Below, piece after piece: positions 1 to 61,923 of a DNA stretch of 64,000 nucleotides. The DNA comes from Octopus sinensis. Its lineage: Eukaryota. The notes below the pieces were generated by a model. It was not told the origin of the DNA and made no database searches. It saw nothing but the letters and a program-made list of their open reading frames with translations. Location of the stretch: assembly GCF_006345805.1 (NCBI RefSeq), contig NC_043001.1, positions 10,292,001 to 10,356,000 on the forward strand. The letters run 5' to 3'. Position 1 is the stretch's first letter; each line of letters opens with the position of its first letter. A program made the translations under genes and the position numbers.

Positions 1-861
1 TTCAGAACCATGATTACACATTAGGTTTTTAAATTGTCAGTAAACAAAATGACTCTGAATCGGTTTTACATGTCTTCAAACCAACAGCATATCGCTTGGT
101 GATAAGTCTTCTATTTTCTACTTCTTTATTCTATTTAATTTGATAGCAGTTGTCAGCATAATCTAATTGGTTAAAAGTTTCAGTTTTTGACTGGCCAAAA
201 TGGGCTCCGTTCCAATTTAACACTGAATGTTTGACATTCTTGCTTGATTGGTGTTTACCTTGCAAATTGAAGCCAAAGTATGATAGAGACATGCTAATGA
301 GTATATGGTTCAAACTCAAGGACGAGAAATTATAGCTTTTCTGCCTATAAATAACCAGATAATTCTGGAGCTATCTTTTGATATCCGTATAAGAAAATTT
401 CAACTTGTAAAACTGAAATATTTCAATTTTCAAACTTGTGTCTTGCTATGCTTAAAACATCTCTGCTTTATAGCAAGCCAATAAGATATTTCTGTATCCT
501 AGCATTTTTTTTTTTTTAACTGCATGTGTTTTTCTATGTATAGCATATATATAAATGTGTATATATATATATATACATGTGTCTGTATGTTATAAAAACA
601 TTTCATTACTGAATAAGTAAAGTTTTCATACAGAAAAAAAGGAAAATAGAGAACTGTTACTTCATACTTTTGATTCTTGGAATTTTCAGGAATTCTTATC
701 TAATGAAGGTTGACGAGAAAATTTTAGGATGGATTGTCTCTAAATTAGAAAAAGAATATATTTATTGTATCCTGTGGATCTGGTTAGAAAATTGAGAATA
801 TTCCCCAATTTTCAAAATTTAGCAAATTTTCAACATTTTTTTTGTTCACATCATTACACTA

Positions 862-1860
862 CAGGGTACAGTGAATAAATTGTCATCTTAATTATGAGAA
901 AATGAAAACAACACTGACATCTCATTTTAACAGATATATTTACCAAAACTACGGCCTCCAGACGACTTCAGAATCTCATACAGCTCTTCTGGATGGTCTC
1001 TTTAAGTTGGTCAATGCTGCCATAATTTTTACCTTCAGGTCATCTTTGGTGTTAGGAGTTTTGTTGATCTCTCGCTCAACTGTGCCCCATGCATAATAAC
1101 CAAGGGGGTTGCAGTCTGGGGAGTTAGGTGGCCAGATGTTAGGGGTAATGTGGTTGCAGAAATTGTCTGACGGCCATGACTGGGTTCTCCTGCTTTTGTG
1201 ACATAGTGCAGAGTCTTTTTGCCAGACATAGGGTCTTTCAGCAGCCACCCTCTTGACCCAGGGCAGCACTACTTCCTGCAGGCACTTGATGTGGGCCTCC
1301 GTGTTGAGGCTGAAGTCATATGGGAAGATGAATGGAGGCATAACGTCACCATCACTAGTGATCACTCCAAACACCATGATGTTGACTGGATGCTTGTTTT
1401 TTATCACTCTCAGTACATGTTTTGGGGACACAGCAAGCCAATGGTTGTTCTGTGTGTTCACCATCTGATTCTGGCAGAAATATTTTCTCGTCTGAGAAAA
1501 ATCAAAGCCTGTTCAGTTGGGGGGGATGCTTGAGTTGGTTCAAAAGCATTGTAGCATAGTCTTTCCTCCTGTCCTTGATGGCTTGGGATAAAAATTGGCC
1601 CTCTGTCGTCTTGTATGAGGAATACCGAATGGCTTCATGCAGTACCTGCCTGATAAGAAACTCAGGCACTCCCTGGCAATGGATCTGACTGACTTGGAGA
1701 GTGTTGTCAATCATGGCCTGGATCTCAACAACAAATTCAGGAGTTCTTTTCTTATCAGAATGAGTTTTCCAAGCTGCCATACCTTCATAATCACCATTAG
1801 ACTCCTCCAAATCTTTTGGAATTTATTGCGAATGATATTTGCCTCTCAAACCCTCTTTCA
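862..1860 (-). mobile_element. Decayed Tc1/mariner transposon, DD37D (maT-like) family
   Basis: ORF 976-1464 has a DDD-domain C-terminus (WQKD, 37 residues, then WPPNSPDCNPLG with the third D changed to G). ORF 1502-1810 resembles the N-terminal/HTH part in another frame. Terminus TA|CAGGGT at 860-867. Confidence 0.85.
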
Positions 1861-4923: not shown

Positions 4924-5330
4924 CTTTTACTCTTTTACTCTTTTACTTGTTTCAGTCATTTGACTGTGGCCATGCTGGGGCACCACTTTTAACTGAGCAA
5001 ATCGACAGCAGGACTTATTCTTTGTAAGCCTAGTACTTATTGTATTGGTCTCTTTTGCCAAACTGCTAAGTTACGGGGACATAAACACACCAGCATCGGT
5101 TGTCAAGCGATGTTGGGGGAACAAACACATACACATACATATATATATATATATATATACATATATACGACGGGCTTCTTTCAGTTTCTGTCTACCAAAT
5201 CTACACACAAAGCTTTGGTCAGCCCGAGGCTATAGTAGAAGACACTTGACCACGGTGCCATGCAGTGGGACTGAACCAGGAACCATGTGGTTCGTAAGCA
5301 AGCTACTTACCACACAGCCACTCCTACACC
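4924..5330 (-). mobile_element. tRNA-derived SINE, family A
   Basis: tRNA-like head, central (TA/CA)n and (GTAAAAGA)n tail; many copies in the window. Confidence 0.9.
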
Positions 5331-5399
5331 TTGAACATTACACTTGATACCATTTATGACCAGTTCTTTTCTCGATTCATTTGTTCTCTCTCATTCATA

Positions 5400-15029: not shown

Positions 15030-15390
15030 GGAGGTTCCTACTACATAACTTAATGAAGGCCACTGACAAACTATGGCTGGTGCAAAGTCCCATCCAGATC
15101 TAAGGTAACCTGGTGATGGAGCAGTGTGCTACACGGAGCCATTACAGCAAAGAAACAGGTCTGGAAGAATGGTGGTAGCAGCAAACTGTATCAGGTTGTA
15201 AGAAGGGAAGCTAAGAGACAGGTATATTTAGTTAGAGGAAAAGCAGACTGGAAGAAGTTTGCCAATGTTCTATGGCATGTAGACCAGAGACTCGAGGTGT
15301 TCCAGATTCCAAGACAATGTGTCAGAGAGAATCACAATGCGTTTCCATGGATGACAGTTCACTTGCAGTTAGTGATTCTGCATGGGTTCT
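15030..15390 (+). mobile_element. RTE-clade LINE fragment (region between endonuclease and RT)
   Basis: ORF 15126-15434 (AITAKKQVWKNGGSSKLYQVVRREAKRQVYLVRGKADWKKFANVL...VFQIPRQCVREN) resembles the RTE linker. Confidence 0.7.
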
Positions 15391-15880
15391 GTCAAAGGTT
15401 CTGCAAAATTGGGCGTAACATCTTTGCTACATGATCTAAATTTATTTATAAAAATGTCTATCGGATGAGTTCACAAGTATTGCTATTATTATTATTATTA
15501 TTATTATTATTAAAGACCATTTCAATTCAGCTGAGGTTAATTTGGACTTTTCTAAGTTTGCGAAACGGTTATGTAAAACTCTGAAATCAGTGCCCAAACA
15601 ATATATAATCATGACCTGATTAAAATAATAAATTGGCTCTTCTTGTATTATATGCCTAATCAAAGTACATAACAATTCCACAATAATACAATGGTAAATT
15701 TATTTGCTCAAAGCATTTCACATATTAAAGTAATAACTAAACATCACATTTCTACATATTTCAGCTGCTTATAGTTGATGTCTTCTTTTTAAATTTTCTG
15801 AACTGATTTCAATTTTATTGTTGTATATTACTTACAGGAGAACATTTAATATAAACAAATATCATATTACATATAAAAGA

Positions 15881-20343: not shown

Positions 20344-21187
20344 AAAAACAAGCAGCATTTATCTAAACTTCTTTAATGCAGAGGCATTATTAAATAGTTA
20401 AATTAGTGTTAACATATTTAGATGCATGGAACATTCAGAGACTCTCTAGAAATATGTGAAGAAGGAAGGGATCAGTGAATGACTAATATTTTAATTTTTT
20501 TGTAGCAAAAAACAGGAACCAAACCCGAACATGTTTTTTTGTCTTCTGACATCAACAACATTTACCGAAGTGATGAAAGAATTACTAGATAAATGTACAT
20601 GAGTGCACACTTATCATAAATTTGCAATTGTTTAGAAATGAAAATATCTTAAATAGTTTATCTGTGATATCACTGACCTGACTGCAACGAAATGTTTCCA
20701 ATGCAACACATACACAGCTCCAGGTTATTTTGCACATTAGAAATTATAATAGCTTTTGATTTAATATGCTAGCTATCCTCATCATTTTTTTAATGTTTTT
20801 TTTCAAAATGATTGTAAAATAGAAATTGAATAATAGTATAATTGTTATTGTATTTATTACATGACTATGTTTCACTAATATTGTGTAACTTGTTTTAAAA
20901 AGATGGTTGCCAATTACACTTGACAGGTGTTATATGATCTTTGCACTGTTTTATATTTTCTGCTTTGGATATTGTGTTTTTCAATGGAATTCAAGACAGA
21001 CCTAGCTTATTAACTTATTATCATCATCATCATCACCAACAGCATTATTTTATTCTCTATTTTTACTTACTGACCTTGCGAACGTTTCTACAACTATGTA
21101 GGACTTGTTTCATTCTTTTTTCATTCTTGACTATTATATATGGTTTTTAGAATCACCACTTCCTGTGCTAGTTTGGTTACTTGATTA

Positions 21188-21385
21188 CATCATCATCATC
21201 ATCATCATCGTTTAACGTCCGTTATCCATGCTAGCATGGGTTGGACGGTTCGACCGGGGATCTGGGAAGCCAGAAGGCTGCACCAGGCTCCGGTCTTATC
21301 TGGCAATGTTTCTACAGCTGGATGCCCTTCCTAATGCCAACCACTCCGTGAGTGTAGTGGGTGCTTTTTATGTGCCACCTGCACT
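21188..21385 (-). mobile_element. Family B / RTE-type 3' end (198 bp), fused to U6
   Basis: (CAT)7 on plus, then the B 3' block; truncated directly at the U6 oligo-T end. Confidence 0.9.
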
Positions 21386-21480
21386 AAAAAATATATGGAA
21401 CGCTTCACGAATTTGCGTGTCATCCTTGTGCAGGGGCCATGCTAATCTTCTCTGTATCATTCCAATTTTAGAATATGTAC
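21386..21480 (-). pseudogene. U6: U6 snRNA retrocopy (about nt 16 to the 3' end)
   Basis: Minus strand GTACATATTCTAAAATTGGAATGATACAGAGAAGATTAGCATGGCCCCTGCACAAGGATGACACGCAAATTCGTGAAGCGTTCCATATATTTTTT. The ACAGAGA box is intact, there are two CpG-type transitions, and the 5' stem-loop is missing or diverged. Confidence 0.93.
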
Positions 21481-22204
21481 CACCGTTGCTATTTTCTAAT
21501 TCTAGTGAACCATATGTGCAATTTGTAATCTAGTCTGTTTACTTAGTGCATAAGTCTCCACTTTTATTATCTTCCACTGAGTCTGTAGTATTGAATTCCT
21601 AGTAGTGACTATTTTCATCATGAGTAAAAACCAGTTACCAGAGTGCGCTAGCTGTTGATACTCTTCCCTTTAATGAAGACACTCTAGGTTTCATAATATT
21701 TTTCAGTTAAGCCTTTTGTCTGTGGTTAACTGTTGTAAGTTTGAAATTTTCTTCCCATCTTCAATAGAATCTATAATGGTACATATTCATCAAGAAGAGG
21801 CAGTCCTAAACTTTTTATGACTATAATGATTAAATACTGAACACCAGGCTCCATTCAAAATTAATCTCTGAAATCACTGCAAATCTCAAACTTACATATA
21901 AACATGTATATACATTGTAACTACGACTATCATGAATAATTTATCATCTAACCAATTACAAAGCTGCAAACTCTGTCAAACCTTGTTTGAGGGTTGTAAA
22001 TTATGAATGTATAACAGAAATATTGGTTTCGACTTTGGGATGACTTTCTTTCCAAACAAACTATATTTCAAATAATTGTGCATTGAAAAAACATTTTAGA
22101 CAAAATAATTTTTCAGAATTGAATGCATTTTTACGTATTAATCATAACTATAGGGTCAACTCTTCTGTGAAACGGTTGTAAGATGCTTTAAATAAGACAT
22201 ATTT

Positions 22205-23481: not shown

Positions 23482-26239
23482 AATAATGCCAAAATTTTAA
23501 CTGACACTTAATTACTTTTGGAAAGAACATTATTTTCAAAATGATTCTTCTGGTTCAATCTAACATATTGCTTTTTATACTTTAATGCTCAATTTTCTTG
23601 CATGCAGCAGTGGAATGAAATCTGAAAATGGATTTTTGATGAGCTTTAATATCCACTCTGGAAAATCTTAAAAAAGGGGTTAAAAATACTATTTTATTCT
23701 AACTTAGCTTTGAGGAATTTCATTACATCATCCCTCTTGGCTGCACCAAGTTCACAATTCTACTGGTAATTTTAATGTTGCTTACAAACAAGGATAAAAC
23801 ATGTAATTATTTATGCTAACACTTCCCTGATAGGTAACTGTTCAACTGAATAATTAACAAAAAAATTTATATATTGCAGTATATACAAAATAAATGCATG
23901 GAATTTACATACAAGAAAGTTTTATATTTACTTAAATCTCTCTCATTCTCTCTCTCTTTCTCTCTCGTGTGTGTGTAACTTATATAAACGTGTGCACACA
24001 CACACACACACACACTAGAGGAAGAGAAGCATTTAATGGAAAGTCAAAAAACAGATTTTTTTTTAGTTTATTGAATGTCAAAATGCAAATTTAATTGCTG
24101 TGTTTTGTAGTAGCTTTTTGCAATTTAATGCAGCATTTCTAAAGAACTGCTTGGTGCACTTAGCTCAAAGAATTCCATGCTTCAGTCAACACTCTGCATT
24201 ACATTTTTTATCCTTAAAACTACGGAATTATAATTGAAAATTATAGTATTTTAAATTCTGCTGTAAATCTAACAGTCCATAATGTCAAGTTATTTACTTT
24301 CTTATTTTTAATTTTTGGATTTTTTAAAAACATTTTGGCTGACTTTTTACTTCCATACTTGAAATGTGAATTAGAAGTTCAATGTATTCGATCATGGACA
24401 AGTTGTATACGCTTATGTATATAATTTAGTATCTGTGTACGAATATGTGTATACATTTAATCACGTGTGTTAGTATTTATTTCACTTTCAGTGTAAAATT
24501 GATGTGAAAATGAATGTTTAGAAGTTGATTGGGTATGTATATAAATTAATCAGGCAATTCTTGTCTGTTACAACATTGACGAACAAAATATGAATTTTAA
24601 TAAAAGGAATTTCTAGATAAGTTATATTTACCTAATCGGTTCACATTTTTCTAAGAATATCTTAAGTGTTAGTTTAGATCACGATTTTTCATCAACCCAG
24701 TCCATAAGTGGAGATATCATTGTGTGGATAAATTGATTCTTGCATTTTGGTGAAAGGTACATTTGAACTTGTTCGTGCGTTGTCAATAGAATCGTTTAGT
24801 TTATGCCCTGAATTAGCTTTCCTTGTACTCTCTCTTCTGCCTTACCCATTAGCACTTGTTTTTGAGGAAGACATACAAACAATTGACAATCACTCACTTT
24901 GCAGTATAAACAATATTGTAAGTTTTACATAGAAACAGATCATAACTTTGTTGCTTCAATATACATCTTCAAAATGTCACCATTCCAATTATAGTTGAAG
25001 CATTTATTATACATGTCTTCATCTTTCACACACTTGAGTGTTTGTTGTTTATTGATTGTTATTGAAGAAATACGGATGCGTTTTGCACCTTAGATGATTC
25101 TATGGATTTCATTTATTATTTTCTTTTTATAAGTCTTTTTCTCATTATTTTTCATTGAAACATCTCTGTTGGTATTCCATCTATAAAAGCATAATGCCCC
25201 CTTCAAGATTGTTCTAATGATGATTAATGATAAATTTTAGAATGAAGAGCAAATGCGAAGTAAATAAGTATCTTGTATTGACTACAAAAAATGTATGCAC
25301 AATTGAAACCGAGGGAAGCACAAAAGGTAAAGGTGAGATCTGGGCAGAGGATGTTGGGCTTTACACATAAGATGATATGATAGCAAAGAATGACGATGAT
25401 ATGTTGCAATACAGAATATGCCAAACTCTGCCAGAAATGAAAAACAGGCATTAAAATGGAGATGATGATAGCATTTGCTCAGTGACTTAGCTGTACATAA
25501 TAGCTTGAAGCACTCTTAGATATTTGTCGAATTTAGTCACTACATATAATTCCTCTTGTTTCAGGCCACAGTATTAAGAGCTTTATTTTTCTGATATCCA
25601 TCTCATACAATAATATTCCATATAATGCTACGCATGGGCACATGTGTTTACCTGGGTGGCTGCACTTCTACCACAATACACTACAATTTAAATAGCTTGT
25701 ATTAAATATTTGTCTTGTTACATCTCTACTCTATGGTGTAAACACCTTTGCCAGTGATGGTGAAACATTTACATCACATTGACAATTAGGTAAGAAATTT
25801 AGAAATGCCAAACATTTTATTTTTTCTATTATTAACACTAATGTGTAGAATTGCATAATCATCTTAACTATAGTAATGTCCATTAGTGAGTATTTTCCTT
25901 GTATTGTAGGTGGAATGGATCATAGCCTCAGAGTTTTCTTACTGAATGTGAAGGCTTTCATAGAAGATTAGTGAATACCTGCTTGTGAAGGAAACTTGTT
26001 ACTTATTGGAAACTTTCTTATGGTACTTTTATGGAGCTTAAATGGTTCTTAGAGACTGTTAATCTACTTTGCGTCCCTTGTATTGTTCAGGTTACAGTGT
26101 ACAGGATCATGTCAAATGTATTATTGTAAATTTGCTTTTCTTTAAATGAGCATTTTTCTCTCCTTAACTGAGAACTTCTTTTAGCAGCCTCCCTAGATAT
26201 TTAACTTATTGCTTCATATCCCAACACAAACCTAAACTA

Positions 26240-26494
26240 CATCATCATCATCGTTTAACGTCTGTTTTCCATGCTAGCATGGGTTGGATGGTTTGACCGG
26301 GGTCTGGGAAGCCAGGAGGCTGCACCAGGCTCCAATCTGATCTGGCAAGCTTTCTACAGCTGGATGCCCTTCCTAATGATCTTTGCACTGTTTTATATTA
26401 GTGGGGTGCTTTTTATATGCCACTGGCACAGGTGTCATGGAAGGCTGGCAACAGCCACGATCAGTTGGTGCTTTTTACGTGCCACCAGCACAGA
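26240..26494 (-). mobile_element. Family B repeat
   Basis: (CAT)n tail and B block. Confidence 0.8.
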
Positions 26495-26765
26495 AAACTT
26501 AAACTAATTTTGTATCTTGTGAAAACTGAGAATTACTTTTAGTGTCTAGTTAACTAATTTGAAGACTCACTAACTGCTCCATTCCTACTTGTGTCATATG
26601 CATATTTAACTGTTTACAGTAGTATTGCAACTGCAGCTGTTAGAGATAACCTTCCTATACCACCTGATTAACATAACTCATGACTGGCAAAGCACCAACA
26701 TAGCTACTGAGATGCTGGAAAACTATGCTTGTTAGATAAGCATTTCTCAGCATTAATTGCCTAAA

Positions 26766-35014: not shown

Positions 35015-35592
35015 TCTTTTACTTGTTTCAGTCATTTGACTGCAGCCATGCTGGAGCACCGCCTTTAGTCGAGCAAATCGACCCCGGGACTTATTCTTTG
35101 TAAGCCTAGTACTTATTTTATCGGTCTCTTTTTGCCGAACCGCTAAGTGATGGGGACGTAAACACACCAGCATCGGTTGTCAAGCAATGCTAGGGGGACA
35201 GACACTGACACACAAACACACACGCATACATATATATATACATATATATGACACGCTTTTTTCAGTTTCCGTCTACCAAATCCATTCACAAGGCATTGGT
35301 CGGCCCGGGGCTATAGCAGAAGACACTTGCCCAAGATGCCATGCAGTGGGACTGAACCCGGAACCATGTGGTTGGTTAGCAAGCTACTTACCACACAGCC
35401 ACTCCTGCGCCTATGTATATACATATATACGACAGGCTTCTTTCAGTTTCTGTCTACCAAATCCACTCACAAGGCATTGGTCAGCCCGGGGCTATAGCAG
35501 AAGACACTTGCCCAAGATGCCACGCAGTGGGACTGAACCTAGAACCATGTGGTTGGTTAGGAAGCTACTTACCACACAGCCACTCTCGCGCC
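35015..35592 (-). mobile_element. SINE family A plus an extra 5' half
   Basis: Full copy 35015-35411 and a second head at 35424-35592. Confidence 0.9.
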
Positions 35593-35599
35593 TACCTTG

Positions 35600-36021
35600 T
35601 AGCTATTCACTGTTGAAAGAGGCCAGGCAAAGCAAGTCCACCAGGAAGCTGATGATAATCCTCTTTGTCAACATCAAGGGTTTCACCTACATCTACTGGG
35701 TTCCCTCTGGCCGAATGGTCAACAAAGGGTATTTTGTGGAGGTTCTGAGGAAGCTTTGGAAGAGATTTCATTGCAAAAGGACAGAGCACCAGCACCAGTC
35801 CCCAGTACTATCCTGGTAACCAAATACTTGACAGAGATGGGCATTAGAACTGTTTCTCACCTTCCCCTACAATCCAGACATTGCTCCCTGCAATGCTACA
35901 ACAGAAAAGTGCACCAAAGTCAGGGAATCCTACTTTCAAGGAGTTTAGAGTTTTGTACTTCTTTGAAATTAATAAATGTCTCACCTGAAAATGTCTCAAA
36001 ACTTATGGAATGCACTTTGTA
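35600..36021 (+). mobile_element. Decayed mariner (DD34D-type) fragment with right end
   Basis: KLMIILFVNIKGFTYIYWVPSGRMVNKGYFVEVLRKLWKRF, then ILVTKYLTEMGIRTVSH and PDIAPC in shifted frames; ends AAACTTATGGAATGCACTTTG|TA. Confidence 0.8.
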
Positions 36022-36654
36022 TTTCTGTGTCATTAGGAAAAGCAGGTATTATATAAAAAAACACGATTTTGACTTAAATAACAACAAATCCCACCTCAAG
36101 ACTGTTTGTTTTTTTTGAGGGGTGAGTGCTAAAAGTACTTGGAAACTACTTTGTCTTTACAGCAAAACAAAGGTATTTTAACTTGATTATAAACTCTGAC
36201 ACATTTTAAACTGTTTAGGGTTTCTTCAAAGTGAATATTGTATGAAATGATGCAGGTTTTCTTTGTGATTTCCTGCAATCTTAGATCAACGGCTCTGAAA
36301 CTGACAATAATTGTAACATTTTGTACCCCTTCTTTTCTCTTTATTAATGAGAAGACAAATTAGTTTGCATCAATGTAATTTGTCTGTCTTCGTAGTTTTC
36401 GGTGAGTTTAAAAATCTTAAAACAATCTGTATATTAATACAACAGTACATTCTTACCCAACTAGCTTTTGCATTATACTGGAGGAATTCAAAGGAGAGAA
36501 AAAGAGAAAAACCAAAGAAAAAAAAAATAGCAAATAAGAGATAATAATGGTAAATGGTGATGGTAGTGTTTGTTGTTGGCAGCCATGGTTGTATTTGTGG
36601 TGCCAATGATGACTTCTTGCACTAAAACACATGTCAAATCATAGTGTGTGTGTG

Positions 36655-39991: not shown

Positions 39992-40256
39992 AAACTGAAT
40001 CAAAAGAATTGTAGTAGATTTGAATCTCATGAATTTAATTTTCTGTCTTTGATCTATTTATATAAATACTATGAACGCTCAGGAATTCCTAAAGTAAAGT
40101 AAATCCAGTTGCATATGCACTTCTATTGCTCATGACATTAGGTAGCCAAAAACTGCAGATGAGCTTTACACAACATCCCACAAAGTCTCTATCTGAATAT
40201 ATTTTCATTTATATATATATATACCATGATGATGCTGATATATACATGTACATATA

Positions 40257-40470: not shown

Positions 40471-40489
40471 ATATTATACCATGATGATG

Positions 40490-40532
<43 letters not shown>

Positions 40533-45025: not shown

Positions 45026-45251
45026 CACAATGATTGTCAGGTGAGACAGTATAGTGGCCATGAGCATTGCAGGTCATCTTAGATTAGTGGCACTGGTGCA
45101 GTTTGAGTATGTGTCTACATATAGGCCAAGGACAGTTACAGTTTTAGGAAGGAAAGAAGGAAGGATTGGGTGAATTGTTTAGTGCAGAACAGGCTGAGAG
45201 ATAAGGTGCAGAAACAATAATGTGAGAGACAAATGGACATGAATGGAAATA

Positions 45252-45640
45252 GGCGCAGGAGTGGCTGTGTGGTAAGTAGCTTGCTAACCAACCACATGGT
45301 TCCAGGTTCAGTCCCACTGCATGGCATCTTGGGCAAGTGTCTTCTACTATAGTCTCGGGCTGACCAATGCCTTGTGAGTGGATTTGGTAGACGGAAACTG
45401 AAAGAAGCCTGTCATATATATATATATATGTGTGTGTTTGTGTGTGTTCCCCTAGCATTGCTTGACAACCGATGCTGGTGTGTTTACGTCCCCGTCACTT
45501 AGCGGTTCGGCAAAATGAGACCGATAGAATAAGTACTGGGCTTACAAAAAGAATAAGTCCCAGGGTCGAGTTGCTCGACTAAAGGCGGTGCTCCAGCATG
45601 GCCGCAGTCAAATGACTGAAACAAGTAAAAGAGAAAGAGA
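45252..45640 (+). mobile_element. SINE family A
   Basis: Full-length copy. Confidence 0.9.
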
Positions 45641-48530: not shown

Positions 48531-49535
48531 TATGTTTGTCTCTTCCTGGCTTACTCTATTGGTTTAATAAAAACAAATCCAGATTAGTATATGGTGTTCA
48601 TGACACTGTTTATTACTTTACTCAAATTTCTATGTTTTAGCTCAATTTTGAGTCATGTCTGAAAGGGATGCTTTAAGAAACGTAATGTGAAATATGATTT
48701 TATCATTTACGTTGCTGTTGTTTCATAGTTTGTCTCCTTAACTCTCTTTAAAATTTCACATTTTCATATTCACAGATATTTCAAGTGTGTATGTGTGAGA
48801 CAAAGAGAATGATTTTATGTATTTTCTCTATGTTTACAGAAACTTTAAAAAAAAACATAGTATACAACAATTCTTGTAATTCAATAGTTAGCTCCTAACG
48901 ATGATGTAAATGAGATGGTGAACAATAATTATATAGTATTTATAAACAACCTACAGTCAACAAGTGTAATGATACTGCCACATTTCCTTCACTGTCACAC
49001 CGTTAGATCACATCTAATAATAACTTCATTAAATTTTCTTTCATTTGTTATTATTTATTAGTATATAGGTCATATTTTTTCTTAGCTTGTTCACAATTCA
49101 GTCTGCAATGATTATGAACACTATCATTGTACATTTTAATCTGAGTTTGCCAATAATCAACCACTGGCTTATTTGAATACAATCTGTACTTCATGTTCAT
49201 GTAGATCGTCCGTTGAGTATATATAGCTAAGCAGTTTATAGATCTGGTACATGTCTGCAGACAACATGCCTACATTGAAAAGCATTAATATTCAAAATAT
49301 GATGAATTAGCTGATAGATCTGAGCATAATTTAATTATAATGCAAGGCTGTTTAAAAATTGGAATTCATGCAAGTCCAATGTAAATTATCACACAGCAGA
49401 AACTGAATACTTTCTGCATAAACAGACTTTATGACAAAATGTGTGTTACAGACATTGAAATCTCACTTCAAAACCTGGCTTGCTTGGGCATCATACATTT
49501 GTTACTTGGGGATATATAATATATATATATATATA

Positions 49536-49945
49536 GGCACGGGAGTGACTGTGTGGTAAGTAGCTTGCTTACCAACCACATGGTTCCGGGTTCAGTCCCA
49601 CTGCGTGGCACCTTGGGCAAGTGTCTTCTGCTATAGCCCCGGGCCGACCAATGCCTTGTGAGTGGATTTGGTAGACGGAAACTGAAAGAAGCTCGTCATA
49701 TATATGTATATATATATATTTGTGTGTGTGTTTGTGTGTCTGTGTTTGTCCCCCTCCCCCAACATCGTTTGACAACCGATGCTGGTGTGTTTACTGTCCC
49801 TGTAACTTAGTGGTTCAGCAAAAGAGACTGATAGAATAAGTACTAGGCTTACAAAGAATAAGTCCTGGGGTCGATTTACTTGACTAAAGGCGGTGCTCCA
49901 GCATGGCCACAGTCAAATGACTGAAACAAGTAAAAGAGTAAAAGA
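49536..49945 (+). mobile_element. SINE family A
   Basis: Full-length copy. Confidence 0.9.
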
Positions 49946-55887: not shown

Positions 55888-56297
55888 CTCTCATTTACTC
55901 ATTTACTTGTTTCAGTCATTTGACTGTGGCCATGCTGGAGCACTGCCTTTAGTCGAGCACATCGACCCCAGAACTTATTCTTTGTAAGCCTAGTACTTAT
56001 TCTATCGGTCTCTTTTTGCCGGACTGCTAAGTTACGGGGATGTAAACACACCAGCATCGGTTATCAAGCGATGTTAGAGGGACAAACACAGACACACAAA
56101 CATATACACACATATATATATATACATATATATATGACAGGCTTCTTTCAGTTTCCGTCAACCAAATCCACTCACAAGGCATTGGTCGGCCCGGGGCTAT
56201 AGTAGAAGACACTTGCCCAAGTTGCCACGCAGTGGGACTGAACCCGGAACCATGTGGTTGGTAAGCAAGCTACTTACCACAGAGCCACTCCTGCGCC
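55888..56297 (-). mobile_element. SINE family A
   Basis: Full-length copy. Confidence 0.9.
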
Positions 56298-56394
56298 TGT
56301 GAATAAGAGATATGAATAAGAGTGCAAAGTTTGTGAGAAATTGTACTCTTACCCAACCATTATTATTACACTGCGTTCCCTTTTGTTTGTTTGT

Positions 56395-60591: not shown

Positions 60592-60992
60592 ACTCTTTTT
60601 ACTCTTTTACTTGTTTCAGTCATTTGACTGTGGCCATGCTGGAGCACCGCCTTTTTTAACCCCGGGACTTATTCTTTTGTAAGCCCAGTACTTATTCTAT
60701 CGGTCTCTTTTGCCGAACCGCCAAGTGACGGGGATGTAAACAAACCAGCATCGGTTGTCAAGCAATGCTAGGGGAACAAACACAGACACACAAACACACA
60801 CATACATATATATATATATACATATATACGACGGGCTTCTTTTCAGTTTCCGTCTACCAAATCCACTCACAAGGCATTGGTCGGCCCGGGGCTGTAGCAG
60901 AAGACACTTGCCCAAGATGCCACGCAGTGGGACTGAACCCGGAACCATGTGGTTGGTTAGCAAGCTACTTACCACACAGCCACTCCTACGCC
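60592..60992 (-). mobile_element. SINE family A
   Basis: Full-length copy. Confidence 0.9.
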
Positions 60993-61923
60993 TATTACTT
61001 CATGTTACAAATATAACTGTTCTGTTATTCCCAACTTTGCTCAAGAGAAACCAAAGGAATTTTGTAAAAGAAGAGTGAATACCATTTCTTTAGTCAATTC
61101 TGCTCTATTAGCTAAAAAAAAAAGCGATGATCTCAAGATCATAGCAGGGTGGATCCACCTTCTCATACTGTTAACATTTCTATTTCAACAGAAAGCAACT
61201 ACTTACAGTTTGGTGGGAGAAGTGTTAATGGTGAATCGGAAGCAAACACATAAATAGCAGATAAATAGAAGCTTTGATGCTTATATTTTTAAACAATTGT
61301 TTACTAACTCCAAGCATTATTAGTTGTTTAAAATTAATCAATTTATACTTCCTATTAAAGTTGTTAATTAATCTGATAGTCATCAATAAAAAAATTTCAC
61401 TGAGTACCGGAGGTCTTTTTCAAATTTATTTAGAAAATTTGTAACTAGAGGCATGAAAACTTAAAACGCTGTTCATCTGTCATTGACACTTCTATTTATC
61501 TGCTCTTAAAAATTAATTTGGAAAGACACACAGACACACACACACACACACATACACATATACACACACTCACTCATTCTCCATTCTCTGTCTGTTTCTT
61601 GTTGATCATTCTTTCACTGTTTTCCACCTACATTTAATGAGTTGGTATGTACAGTTATGATAATTTGTATATTTAAAGAATCTTCTTTACGCTGCTTTTG
61701 TTAGTTTGACATTATCAATTAAAAAGAAAATTTTGTTGATATTGTGAAGAGGTAATGATGTTATTTATCCTTTCTTTTTCCTTCAGTCTGGGTTTTGTGA
61801 ATGGTAAAAGCTGGCACTCTGTCAGATACAGTGACAAGAGTTCCAGATGATTTGATCAGCAGAACAGCCTGCTTGTGAAATTAATGTGCAAGTAGCTGAG
61901 CATGCCACAGACACATGTAATCT

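What the first reader, a model, noticed from the sequence alone, without database searches (positions are those of the whole stretch)
21188..21480. U6 snRNA / RTE-type 3' end chimeric retrocopy
Seen: on the minus strand, about 95 nt of U6 runs to its oligo-T end (CCATATATTTTTT). It continues, via a single A, directly into the last 198 nt of the family B repeat, ending in (GAT)n. Other B copies read ...GGCACCTGTGCAGGTGGCAC at this point, so the B part is truncated exactly where U6 joins. Established: U6/L1 3'-end chimeras are known in mammals and are explained by template switching or by RtcB ligation of U6 (2',3'-cyclic phosphate) to L1 RNA. Inference: an equivalent chimera made by RTE-clade machinery in a mollusc, which would extend the phenomenon beyond L1. 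Caveats: the first ~15 nt of U6 are missing or diverged, and I found no target-site duplication.
Basis: partly seen in the sequence, partly recalled or inferred. Interest (0 to 1): 0.8.

Follow-up and report, generated by a model that had tools for sequence, protein, structure and literature searches.

The report
U6 pseudogene fused to SINE tail
A dead copy of the U6 spliceosomal RNA in an octopus genome is joined, at the RNA's natural 3' end, to the last 200 bases of a common octopus retroposon; this is most likely a single chimeric retrocopy of a kind already described in vertebrates, so it is a modest new example, not a new phenomenon.

Summary
Rfam finds one U6 (101 bits, window 21492-21389, minus strand). 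Its T6 run is followed by one A, then the 3'-terminal 178 nt of repeat family B and (GAT)7G. About 35 other B copies (window plus 122 kb of Octopus vulgaris) continue upstream of this junction with 65-nt modules, so B is 5'-truncated exactly where U6 ends. U6 has no TATA-like element at -30 and a broken 5' stem, so it is a processed pseudogene. The best explanation (confidence about 0.65) is one retrotransposition event: a reverse transcriptase copying B RNA moved to the 3' end of U6 RNA, or copied a pre-ligated U6-B RNA.

- No target-site duplication flanks either the composite or B alone, and only this one case could be examined.
- "RTE-type" is untested, because no LINE partner of B was found.
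- The claimed novelty is not new. Doucet et al. 2015 (PMC4476161) already report U6 chimeras with L2, RTE-like and CR1-like LINEs and their SINEs, typically with 5'-truncated U6 and short or absent duplications.

What remains is a possible first mollusc example. Interest is low to moderate.

The parts
21389..21492 (-). U6 snRNA pseudogene (processed). The ACAGAGA box and AGC triad are intact. There are three substitutions in the conserved body (two at CpG sites), an extra AT before the T-run, a degraded 5' stem-loop, and a T6 run at the 3' end.
   Evidence: Rfam RF00026 101.3 bits, model 1-105/105. Alignment to bona fide U6 genes from L007/L008. The antisense translation differs from the pan-eukaryote U6 antisense ORF pattern at 3 residues plus 1 inserted residue.
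21388..21388 (-). Single A between the U6 T-run and B. Other B copies have T at this position (cTGTGC...). It could be a non-templated nucleotide added at a template jump, a 3'-adenylated U6 end, or a point mutation.
   Evidence: Sequence read. Comparison with other B copies.
21210..21387 (-). 3'-terminal 178 nt of retroposon family B, 5'-truncated. It differs from the subfamily consensus by 8 substitutions in 175 nt (4.6%) and 1 indel. It starts at the hairpin GTGC(A/C)GGTGGCAC, near which several other truncated B copies also start.
   Evidence: BLAST/MAFFT against 9 window copies and about 25 O. vulgaris copies.
21188..21209 (-). (GAT)7G microsatellite tail, the normal 3' end of every B copy.
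21493..21560 (-). 5' flank of the composite. It is single-copy in the sample, with no TATA-like box about 30 nt upstream of U6, no B sequence, and no repeat of the 3' flank.
   Evidence: Sequence. BLAST of flanks. TSD searches.
21100..21187 (-). 3' flank of the composite (TAATCAAGTAACC...). It is single-copy. It begins with TA, like the nick sites inferred for other B insertions. It carries no copy of either the U6 5' flank or the U6 3' end.

Best explanation
This is a chimeric retrocopy made in one retrotransposition event. A non-LTR (LINE) reverse transcriptase primed on the (GAT)n end of a family B retroposon RNA at a TA-rich nick and copied about 200 nt. At or near the hairpin GTGC(C/A)GGTGGCAC it left the B template and continued on the 3' end of a U6 snRNA, which it copied to or almost to the 5' end. 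The whole cDNA was then joined to the chromosome.

Shown directly: the order, strand and exact junction of the parts, the 5' truncation of B, the pseudogene state of U6, and the absence of B sequence upstream.

Inferred: that the two parts arrived together, that the join was made by template jumping and not by prior RNA ligation, and that a 'stringent' LINE recognising the B tail was the enzyme. The clade of that LINE is unknown. The element has no evident function. It is a fossil about 5% diverged, the age of the main octopus SINE/LINE burst.
For: (1) U6 is in sense orientation at the 5' side. Its T6 run plus 1 nt joins directly to a 5'-truncated B with an intact (GAT)7 tail on the same strand. 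This is the architecture of every described U6 chimera (PMC4476161; PMC6789731, reports junctions with 4-8 T).
(2) U6 is not a gene copy. It has no TATA-like element near -30 (sequence), a 5' stem with 2 of 5 pairs broken, and CpG-type substitutions. As a processed copy it needs a retro-competent 3' end, and the B tail is the only one present. There is no poly(A).
(3) No B sequence lies upstream of U6, so U6 did not insert into a full B copy.
(4) B insertions do make TSDs: 28 nt at window 40475-40502/40220-40247, 12 nt at 26495-26506/26228-26239, and about 10 nt at L005:16570. Nothing resembling the U6 3' end is repeated after the focal tail, so a separate B insertion behind U6 is not supported.
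(5) Random same-strand abutment within 1 nt is expected about 4e-5 times per U6 copy.
(6) The two parts have similar divergence. B shows 4.6% from its consensus. The U6 body shows 3 substitutions and one 2-nt insertion in about 87 nt.
(7) Non-LTR RTs jump between templates after adding non-templated nucleotides (PMC8857657), which fits the extra A.
(8) Non-L1 U6 chimeras in platypus and opossum typically have 5'-truncated U6 and tiny or no TSDs, as here.
Against: No TSD flanks the composite. The best candidate, AAAATAGCA/AAACTAGCA, sits 13 nt beyond the tail and is no better than chance. Only one case was found: there was no second U6 in 186 kb, and the genome could not be searched. The metagenome collection holds no octopus DNA, so the negative scans are uninformative. 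The U6 3' end (ATATATTTTTTA) is an AT-rich sequence of the kind B seems to prefer; many B copies sit in (TA)n, so the chance estimate could be too low by one or two orders of magnitude. Truncated B copies starting within about 12 nt of the same point are common, so the B part on its own looks like an ordinary truncated copy. The U6 5' end is more diverged than the rest. The LINE partner is unidentified.
Confidence: 0.65

Rival explanations
1. There were two separate events. A U6 pseudogene was already at the site, and a 5'-truncated B copy later inserted at the AT-rich sequence just behind its T-run, without a duplication or with a small target deletion.
For: About a quarter of B copies are 5'-truncated, and several start within 12 nt of the focal start point. 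B 3' junctions are followed by TA-rich sequence, and many copies lie in (TA)n. The empty site ...ATATATTTTTTA|TAATCAAG would be such a target. No TSD ties U6 and B together. The U6 part may be somewhat more diverged than B if the 5' stem is counted (about 10/107 against 8/175).
Against: It needs a blunt or deleting insertion whose 5' junction happens to fall within 1 nt of the natural U6 RNA end, about 4e-5 per U6 copy before any site preference. It leaves unexplained how a promoter-less U6 copy without poly(A) or any tail got there. B insertions with readable ends have 10-28-nt TSDs, and none is present round B alone.
Confidence: 0.22
2. It is the same single insertion, but the join was made at the RNA level. 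U6 ending in a 2',3'-cyclic phosphate was ligated by RtcB to a B RNA fragment with a 5'-OH, and the chimeric RNA was then reverse-transcribed through its B tail. This is a sub-variant of the best explanation and its confidence is contained within it.
For: This route is demonstrated for human U6/L1 and U6/GFP RNAs (PMC6789731). The T6 run lies within the 4-8 T range seen at such junctions. The clustering of B 5' ends at one hairpin could reflect an RNA cleavage site just as well as an RT pause.
Against: Ligation predicts a precise U-tract/5'-OH join, and the extra A needs a further assumption (3' adenylation or a later mutation). In the ligation assays, junctions with untemplated nucleotides were classed as likely RT-PCR artefacts, not ligation products. 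No ribozyme or known cleavage motif is detected in B. Sequence alone cannot separate the two routes.
Confidence: 0.2
3. It is one copy of an amplified SINE family with a U6-derived head on a B tail (a SINEU-like family), and not a one-off chimera.
For: The curated O. vulgaris repeat annotation lists one SINE/U family (369 kb) and one SINE/U-L1 family (53 kb) (PMC13282606). snRNA-headed SINEs exist in crocodilians (PMC4494074).
Against: There is only one U6 in 186 kb, against about 35 B copies. The flanks are single-copy. Metazoan U6 genes depend on upstream promoter elements (established knowledge; snRNA promoter layout described in PMC4494074), so a retrocopy would be transcriptionally dead. 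The recently active SINE/U insertions average about 730 bp (13,954 bp in 19 copies), not about 300 bp. The known SINEU heads are U1 and U2.
Confidence: 0.05
4. The adjacency is an artefact or secondary rearrangement, meaning an assembly mis-join or a deletion that brought an unrelated U6 pseudogene and a B copy together.
For: Nothing positive. It cannot be excluded without reads, because the junction ORF is not on record in any other assembly.
Against: The junction falls at two biologically meaningful end points at once: the U6 RNA 3' end and a common B truncation point. The parts are on the same strand with a normal B tail. A random mis-join or deletion would rarely do this.
Confidence: 0.03

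Closest known systems
U6 chimeras with non-L1 LINEs and their SINEs in vertebrates: U6-L2 and U6-Mon-1 (platypus), U6-RTEX-2/L2/AnolisSINE2 (Anolis), U6-RTE_Mdo and U6-RTESINE1 (opossum), U6-CR1-like (turkey). Doucet et al. 2015, PMC4476161.
   Same: U6 in sense orientation is joined at its 3' end to a 5'-truncated LINE or SINE 3' part that ends in a simple-repeat tail and not poly(A). The U6 is often 5'-truncated, and TSDs are very short or not found. The partner can be a SINE instead of the LINE itself. No solo or poly(A) U6 forms are expected from 'stringent' LINEs.
   Different: The host is a cephalopod mollusc. The partner is an unclassified octopus retroposon with a (GAT)n tail whose LINE is unknown. 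Only one copy has been seen, against 40 in platypus. The U6 here is nearly full length.
Mammalian U6/L1 chimeric pseudogenes (Buzdin 2002; Garcia-Perez 2007; Moldovan 2019, PMC6789731)
   Same: The overall architecture and the T-run length at the junction (5-7 T in genomic copies) are the same.
   Different: Those have full-length U6, an L1 3' end with poly(A), 6-19-bp TSDs and an L1 EN target site. Here the tail is (GAT)n and there is no TSD. Both L1 template switching and RtcB ligation have been tested experimentally for L1, whereas nothing has been tested here.
SINEU families (U1/U2-headed SINEs of crocodilians; Kojima 2015, PMC4494074) and SINE birth by RTE chimeras with tRNA or 5S rRNA (Kojima 2018, PMC5786205, as summarised in PMC11838501)
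   Same: A small nuclear RNA sequence is placed on the 5' side of a LINE-type tail, probably by template switch. This is the kind of event that can found a SINE.
   Different: Those are amplified families with shared junctions. The focal element shows no sign of amplification, and a U6 head lacks an internal promoter.
Bi- and tripartite chimeric retrogenes of Magnaporthe grisea made by the MGL LINE (PMC2104539)
   Same: They are evidence that template jumps during LINE reverse transcription occur outside mammals.
   Different: They are in a fungus, with a different LINE and different captured RNAs.

Membership tests
U6/LINE-or-SINE chimeric retrocopy (template-switch or ligation class) | A recognisable U6 snRNA sequence in sense orientation at the 5' side | tested here: met
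   Rfam U6 101.3 bits, model 1-105, minus strand 21492-21389
U6/LINE-or-SINE chimeric retrocopy (template-switch or ligation class) | The U6 ends at its natural oligo-U 3' end and is joined directly (0 to a few nt) to the partner | tested here: met
   T6 + A + B. Junctions carry 4-8 T in RNA and 5-7 T in genomic human copies (PMC6789731).
U6/LINE-or-SINE chimeric retrocopy (template-switch or ligation class) | The partner is a 5'-truncated retroposon 3' part on the same strand with its normal 3' tail | tested here: met
   B 21387-21210 plus (GAT)7G. Other copies extend upstream of the junction.
U6/LINE-or-SINE chimeric retrocopy (template-switch or ligation class) | A target-site duplication flanks the whole composite | tested here: not met
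   No match above chance between the 5' flank and 3' flank. This feature is also short (1-9 bp) or missing in the platypus L2 and opossum RTE chimeras, so it is not strictly required for the non-L1 subclass.
U6/LINE-or-SINE chimeric retrocopy (template-switch or ligation class) | The U6 part is processed: no upstream snRNA promoter comes with it | tested here: inconclusive
   No TATA-like box near -30 and a unique AT-rich flank. However, the octopus PSE/TATA consensus is not available for comparison.
U6/LINE-or-SINE chimeric retrocopy (template-switch or ligation class) | Independent recurrence: other U6 copies joined to the same partner family at other breakpoints | not testable with these tools
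   Only 186 kb of octopus DNA was reachable, with one U6. There is no octopus DNA in the searchable DNA collections.
U6/LINE-or-SINE chimeric retrocopy (template-switch or ligation class) | An empty orthologous site lacks both parts | not testable with these tools
   No host exon was found in the window to anchor an orthologue. The junction ORF is not on record elsewhere.
   No RT ORF lies next to any of ~35 B tails. The ORFs near B copies are C2H2 zinc-finger genes or have no Pfam hit. The 32-aa sense ORF of the tail finds no LINE protein among 1.84e9 representatives. The curated octopus TE library could not be searched.
   (GAT)n on all copies. Microsatellite tails are common in RTE (PMC9115989), but L2 elements also end in a simple repeat (TGAA), so this is not diagnostic.
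   ARAGORN finds no tRNA in the window. Rfam at E<=1 finds no tRNA, 5S or 7SL match in any B copy. Full-length B copies have a leader plus 1-4 65-nt modules.
Functional U6 snRNA gene | Intact 5' stem-loop and catalytic core | tested here: not met
   The core ACAGAGA/AGC is intact, but 2 of 5 pairs in the 5' stem are non-canonical and the first ~6 nt are unrecognisable. There are substitutions in the ISL loop (GCGCA to GCACA) and at AACGAU to AAUGAU.
SINEU-like amplified family | Multiple copies share the same head-tail junction with different flanks | tested here: inconclusive
   None was found in 186 kb, but the sample is about 0.007% of a 2.8-Gb genome.

The most novel reading that the evidence does not exclude
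This is the first documented snRNA/retroposon chimera in a mollusc, and possibly in any invertebrate animal. It would show that an octopus 'stringent' LINE with a (GAT)n tail jumps templates onto U6 in vivo. If genome-wide copies share the junction, it would be a nascent or amplified U6-headed SINE, a head type not described so far.
Probability: 0.5. Interest if true: 0.35.

Novelty: new member of a known kind. Interest (0 to 1): 0.27.

Why it matters
If it is a genuine single-event chimera, it is direct genomic evidence that the reverse transcriptase driving one of the large octopus retroposon families can switch templates or copy ligated RNAs. That property underlies SINE birth and processed-pseudogene formation. 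Octopus SINE and LINE activity is currently being discussed in connection with brain function (PMC9115989, PMC12988792). It would extend the taxonomic range of U6 chimeras from vertebrates and a fungus to lophotrochozoans, supporting Doucet et al.'s view that this is an ancient, general property of non-LTR elements. It gives a simple marker (U6 plus tail) for finding which LINE families were active, and when, in cephalopod genomes. It would not change any concept, and the locus itself has no apparent function.

Tried and rejected
(1) TSD search round U6+B and round B alone, using ungapped matches with <=1 mismatch and local alignment against 2000 dinucleotide shuffles. The best 9-mers are at chance level. 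A 30-nt diagonal (21/30 identical) between the U6 5' region and the 3' flank scores below the best alignment (shuffle p about 0.02), which is itself diffuse and AT-rich. I rejected both as TSDs.
(2) U6 inserted into a pre-existing B copy: rejected, because there is no B sequence upstream of U6.
(3) Reconstructing the empty site from paralogous copies of the flanks: the flanks are single-copy in the sample.
(4) Using the chance ORF across the junction (21228-21530 +) to find the same or other junctions. Hits cover either the B part (Octopus vulgaris junk ORFs) or the U6 part (U6 genes in ENA metagenomes), never both. The exact ORF is not on record in any assembly.
(5) Sampling more octopus genome through B-derived ORFs gave six 20-kb loci with no U6.
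(6) The metagenome scan for the junction and the follow-up scan for the B tail both returned nothing, so that collection holds no octopus DNA.
(7) LINE partner search. ORFs near B copies are zinc-finger genes or have no Pfam hit. The sense ORF of the B tail, searched against 1.84e9 proteins, finds only low-complexity proteins and two gene models with exonised B. The small LINE-like ORF at 15126-15434 has no Pfam hit.
(8) Looking for host exons in the window to anchor an orthologous locus found only transposon remnants.
(9) tRNA, 5S or 7SL head in B: none.
(10) B hairpin as an unusually stable structure: the fold of the junction plus tail has z = -1.7, which is not remarkable.

Full report
WHAT IS THERE. 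Rfam finds exactly one RNA gene-like feature above threshold in the 64-kb window: U6 snRNA at 21492..21389 on the minus strand (101.3 bits, E 3.6e-25, model positions 1-105 of 105). A permissive scan (E<=1) adds only microsatellite-driven noise. Reading the minus strand, U6 ends ...GAAGCGTTCCATATATTTTTT. It is followed by a single A (21388), then by GTGCAGGTGGCACATAAAAAGCACCCACTACACTC... down to ...GGACGTTAAAC, then (GAT)7G (21209-21188), then unique sequence TAATCAAGTAACC.

THE PARTNER, 'FAMILY B'. BLAST of the region against the window finds nine further copies of the 3' 175-190 nt, all ending in (GAT)n. The only named proteins similar to the chance ORFs in this repeat are 'hypothetical predicted proteins' of Octopus vulgaris. 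I used six of them to fetch 122 kb of the O. vulgaris assembly GCA_951406725.2, which contains about 25 more B copies at 81-98% identity to the focal one. The host is therefore an Octopus, either O. vulgaris or a close relative.

Full-length B copies have a leader, one to four tandem ~65-nt modules (...TTGCCAGC..CTGGCACCTGTGCCGGTGGCACGTAAAAAGCACCATCCGATCGTGGCC...) and a unique ~175-nt tail. No tRNA, 5S or 7SL similarity is detectable. About eight of roughly thirty independent copies are 5'-truncated inside the last ~210 nt. At least three copies have readable target-site duplications of 28, 12 and ~10 nt. B therefore behaves as a LINE-mobilised retroposon. Truncated copies start preferentially round the hairpin GTGCCGGTGGCAC (L002:10307, L005:16570, L002:7143, L005:7929, window 51543), and the focal B part starts at the 5' base of that hairpin. 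Non-truncated copies read ...CTGGCACCT before it, where the focal copy has ...TTTTTTA. The focal B part differs from the consensus of its subfamily at 8 of 175 positions plus one indel.

THE U6 PART. The catalytic core (ACAGAGA, AGC) is intact. Compared with about a hundred U6 loci picked up through their antisense ORF, and with three bona fide U6 genes from snRNA gene clusters (L007, L008), the focal copy has AACGAU>AAUGAU, GCGCA>GCACA, AUAUAC>AUAUUC and an extra AU before the U-run. Two of the three substitutions are CpG transitions.

The 5' stem-loop is poor, with 2 of 5 pairs non-canonical. However, its 3' half (CGGTGGTAC) is close to the GTACC...CGGCGGTAC variant seen in L007 and L008, so homology reaches to about nt 3-7. 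The U6 is either nearly full length with a mutated 5' end, or truncated by a few nucleotides. Nothing resembling a TATA box lies about 30 nt upstream. The upstream flank is single-copy and unrelated to B. This is a processed pseudogene, not a decayed gene copy. That statement rests on sequence inspection only, because the octopus snRNA promoter consensus was not available.

ONE EVENT OR TWO? Several points favour one event.
- The architecture is exactly that of all described U6 chimeras: U6 in sense at the 5' side, its natural oligo-U end (T6, within the 4-8 T seen at U6 junctions; PMC6789731) joined to a 5'-truncated retroposon with an intact tail on the same strand.
- A promoter-less U6 copy with no poly(A) needs some retro-competent 3' end, and the B tail is the only one present.
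- There is no B sequence upstream, which excludes U6 insertion into B.
- B insertions elsewhere make 10-28-nt duplications, but the sequence preceding the focal B part (the U6 3' end) is not repeated behind the tail, so a normal separate B insertion is not seen.
- From about 8 truncated B 5' ends in 186 kb, a same-strand B end within one nucleotide of a given U6 3' end is expected about 4e-5 times (my arithmetic).
- The two parts are similarly diverged: 4.6% for B, and 3 substitutions plus a 2-nt insertion in about 87 nt for the U6 body.

Other points count against one event.
- No duplication flanks the composite either. The best 9-mer, AAAATAGCA/AAACTAGCA, is displaced 13 nt from the tail and is at chance level.
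- I could examine only one case.
- The U6 3' end is AT-rich (ATATATTTTTTA), and many B copies lie in AT-rich DNA or (TA)n. Site preference could therefore raise the chance figure considerably.

I put the single-event chimera at about 0.65, two independent events at about 0.22, and the remainder on a SINE-family member, a rearrangement or an artefact.

MECHANISM. The most likely course is as follows. Target-primed reverse transcription starts on the (GAT)n end of a B RNA at a TA-rich nick; the focal 3' junction ^TAATCA resembles the inferred nick sites ^TAGTTT, ^ATATAT and ^TTATTT of copies with TSDs. The enzyme copies about 200 nt, leaves the template at or near the hairpin where B cDNAs often end, adds a nucleotide, and resumes on the 3' end of U6 RNA. 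Template jumping that depends on non-templated addition is a demonstrated property of a non-LTR RT (PMC8857657). The extra A fits this, or a 3'-adenylated U6 end (the latter from my own knowledge of small-RNA 3' adenylation, not tested here).

The alternative route, RtcB ligation of U6>p to a 5'-OH B fragment before reverse transcription, is proven for human U6/L1 (PMC6789731) and cannot be separated from jumping by sequence. The extra A and the absence of any detectable ribozyme or cleavage motif make it slightly less economical.

Which LINE supplied the enzyme is unknown. No RT ORF lies next to any B copy. The tail's 32-codon sense ORF matches no LINE protein in 1.84e9 representatives. The octopus genome holds RTE, Dong-R4, CR1, L1-Tx1 and L1 elements (PMC13282606). 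The (GAT)n tail rules out a poly(A)-dependent L1-type route but does not identify RTE.

COMPARISON WITH WHAT IS KNOWN. That has already been published. Doucet et al. 2015 (PMC4476161) found the following:
- 40 U6-L2/Mon-1 chimeras in platypus, almost all with 5'-truncated U6 and TSDs of 1-9 bp in 72.5% of them;
- U6 joined to L1-, L2- and RTE-like (RTEX-2) LINEs and to AnolisSINE2 in the lizard;
- 5'-truncated U6 joined to RTE_Mdo and to RTESINE1 in opossum, without an obvious TSD;
- one CR1-like case in turkey.

They concluded that L1, L2 and RTE clades all generate U6 pseudogenes, and that 'stringent' LINEs do so only as chimeras. Template-jump chimeras are also known in a fungus (PMC2104539). 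snRNA-headed SINEs exist (PMC4494074), and RTE chimeras with tRNA or 5S RNA have been proposed as the origin of SINEs (Kojima 2018, PMC5786205, as cited in PMC11838501). The O. vulgaris repeat annotation even lists one SINE/U and one SINE/U-L1 family, whose snRNA content I could not inspect.

My literature searches found no report of a U6 chimera in a mollusc or other invertebrate animal. The library is limited to open-access papers, so this is not proof of absence. The focal element matches the non-L1 vertebrate cases in every respect that could be tested, including the weak 5' end of U6 and the missing TSD.

VERDICT. It is a new member of a known kind, of low to moderate interest (0.27). The decisive work is a genome-wide U6 census, an orthologous empty site, and identification of the LINE partner. 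All of this is straightforward with the octopus assemblies but was out of reach of the tools available here.

Noticed in passing
L002:3682-4496: A tandem array of 5.9 copies of a 137-nt unit, 97% alike, made of (GAT)n plus the last ~115 nt of the B tail. This is either a B-tail-derived satellite or repeated tail-to-tail insertions.
   Followed up: partly
window 20934-20957 and 26376-26399: An exact 24-nt match (ATATAAAACAGTGCAAAGATCATA) between unique DNA 230 nt 3' of the focal element and the inside of another B copy, where it replaces about 22 nt of the B consensus. It is unexplained. It could be gene conversion, a template jump, or a small unrecognised repeat.
   Followed up: no
window 21019-21046 (minus strand): A second short (GAT)5 tract, preceded by GCTGTTGGT, lies about 140 nt downstream of the focal tail on the same strand. 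It may be an extremely 5'-truncated B insertion.
   Followed up: no
window 51543, 40439; L002:7143, L002:10307; L005:7929, L005:16570: The 5' ends of truncated B copies cluster within about 12 nt of the hairpin GTGCCGGTGGCAC, the same point where U6 is joined. This suggests an RT pause or exit point, or an RNA 5' end.
   Followed up: partly
window 40475-40502 / 40220-40247, and 26495-26506 / 26228-26239: There are clear target-site duplications of 28 nt and 12 nt (1 mismatch each) round two B copies. Many other B copies are embedded in (TA)n or (TG)n microsatellites.
   Followed up: yes
window, e.g. 45233-45447, 60786-61006, 35208-35420, 49527-49742, 56089-56298, 5125-5331: A second, even more abundant ~210-nt SINE-like family with about 13 copies at 82-92% identity, often next to (TA)n/(CA)n. 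Its chance ORFs read ...GTEPGTMWLVSKLLTTQPL.... It has no tRNA match in ARAGORN or Rfam.
   Followed up: no
window 976-1822 (minus) and 35187-36118 (plus): Remnants of a DDE (Tc1/mariner-like) transposase, with only a weak Pfam DDE_3 hit (E 0.007). No host exon was recognised anywhere in the 64 kb.
   Followed up: partly
P0124 and P0125 (protein representatives): Two gene models, a ubiquitin-conjugating enzyme and a protein tyrosine phosphatase, contain a stretch 69-75% identical to the sense ORF of the B tail. B appears to be exonised in, or mis-annotated into, host genes.
   Followed up: partly
L001:7027-7103: A mir-9/mir-79 precursor (62 bits, scoring on both strands) in the O. vulgaris locus fetched for comparison.
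   Followed up: no
L007 (ENA ERZ28675667 ctg818) and L008 (ENA ERZ17082975): Metagenome contigs from unidentified metazoans carry tandem 7SL-U6 gene repeats (L007) and a U2-U6-U5 cluster (L008). Their U6 genes have the 5' stem GTACC...GGTAC, which served as a better yardstick for the focal 5' end than the vertebrate sequence.
   Followed up: partly
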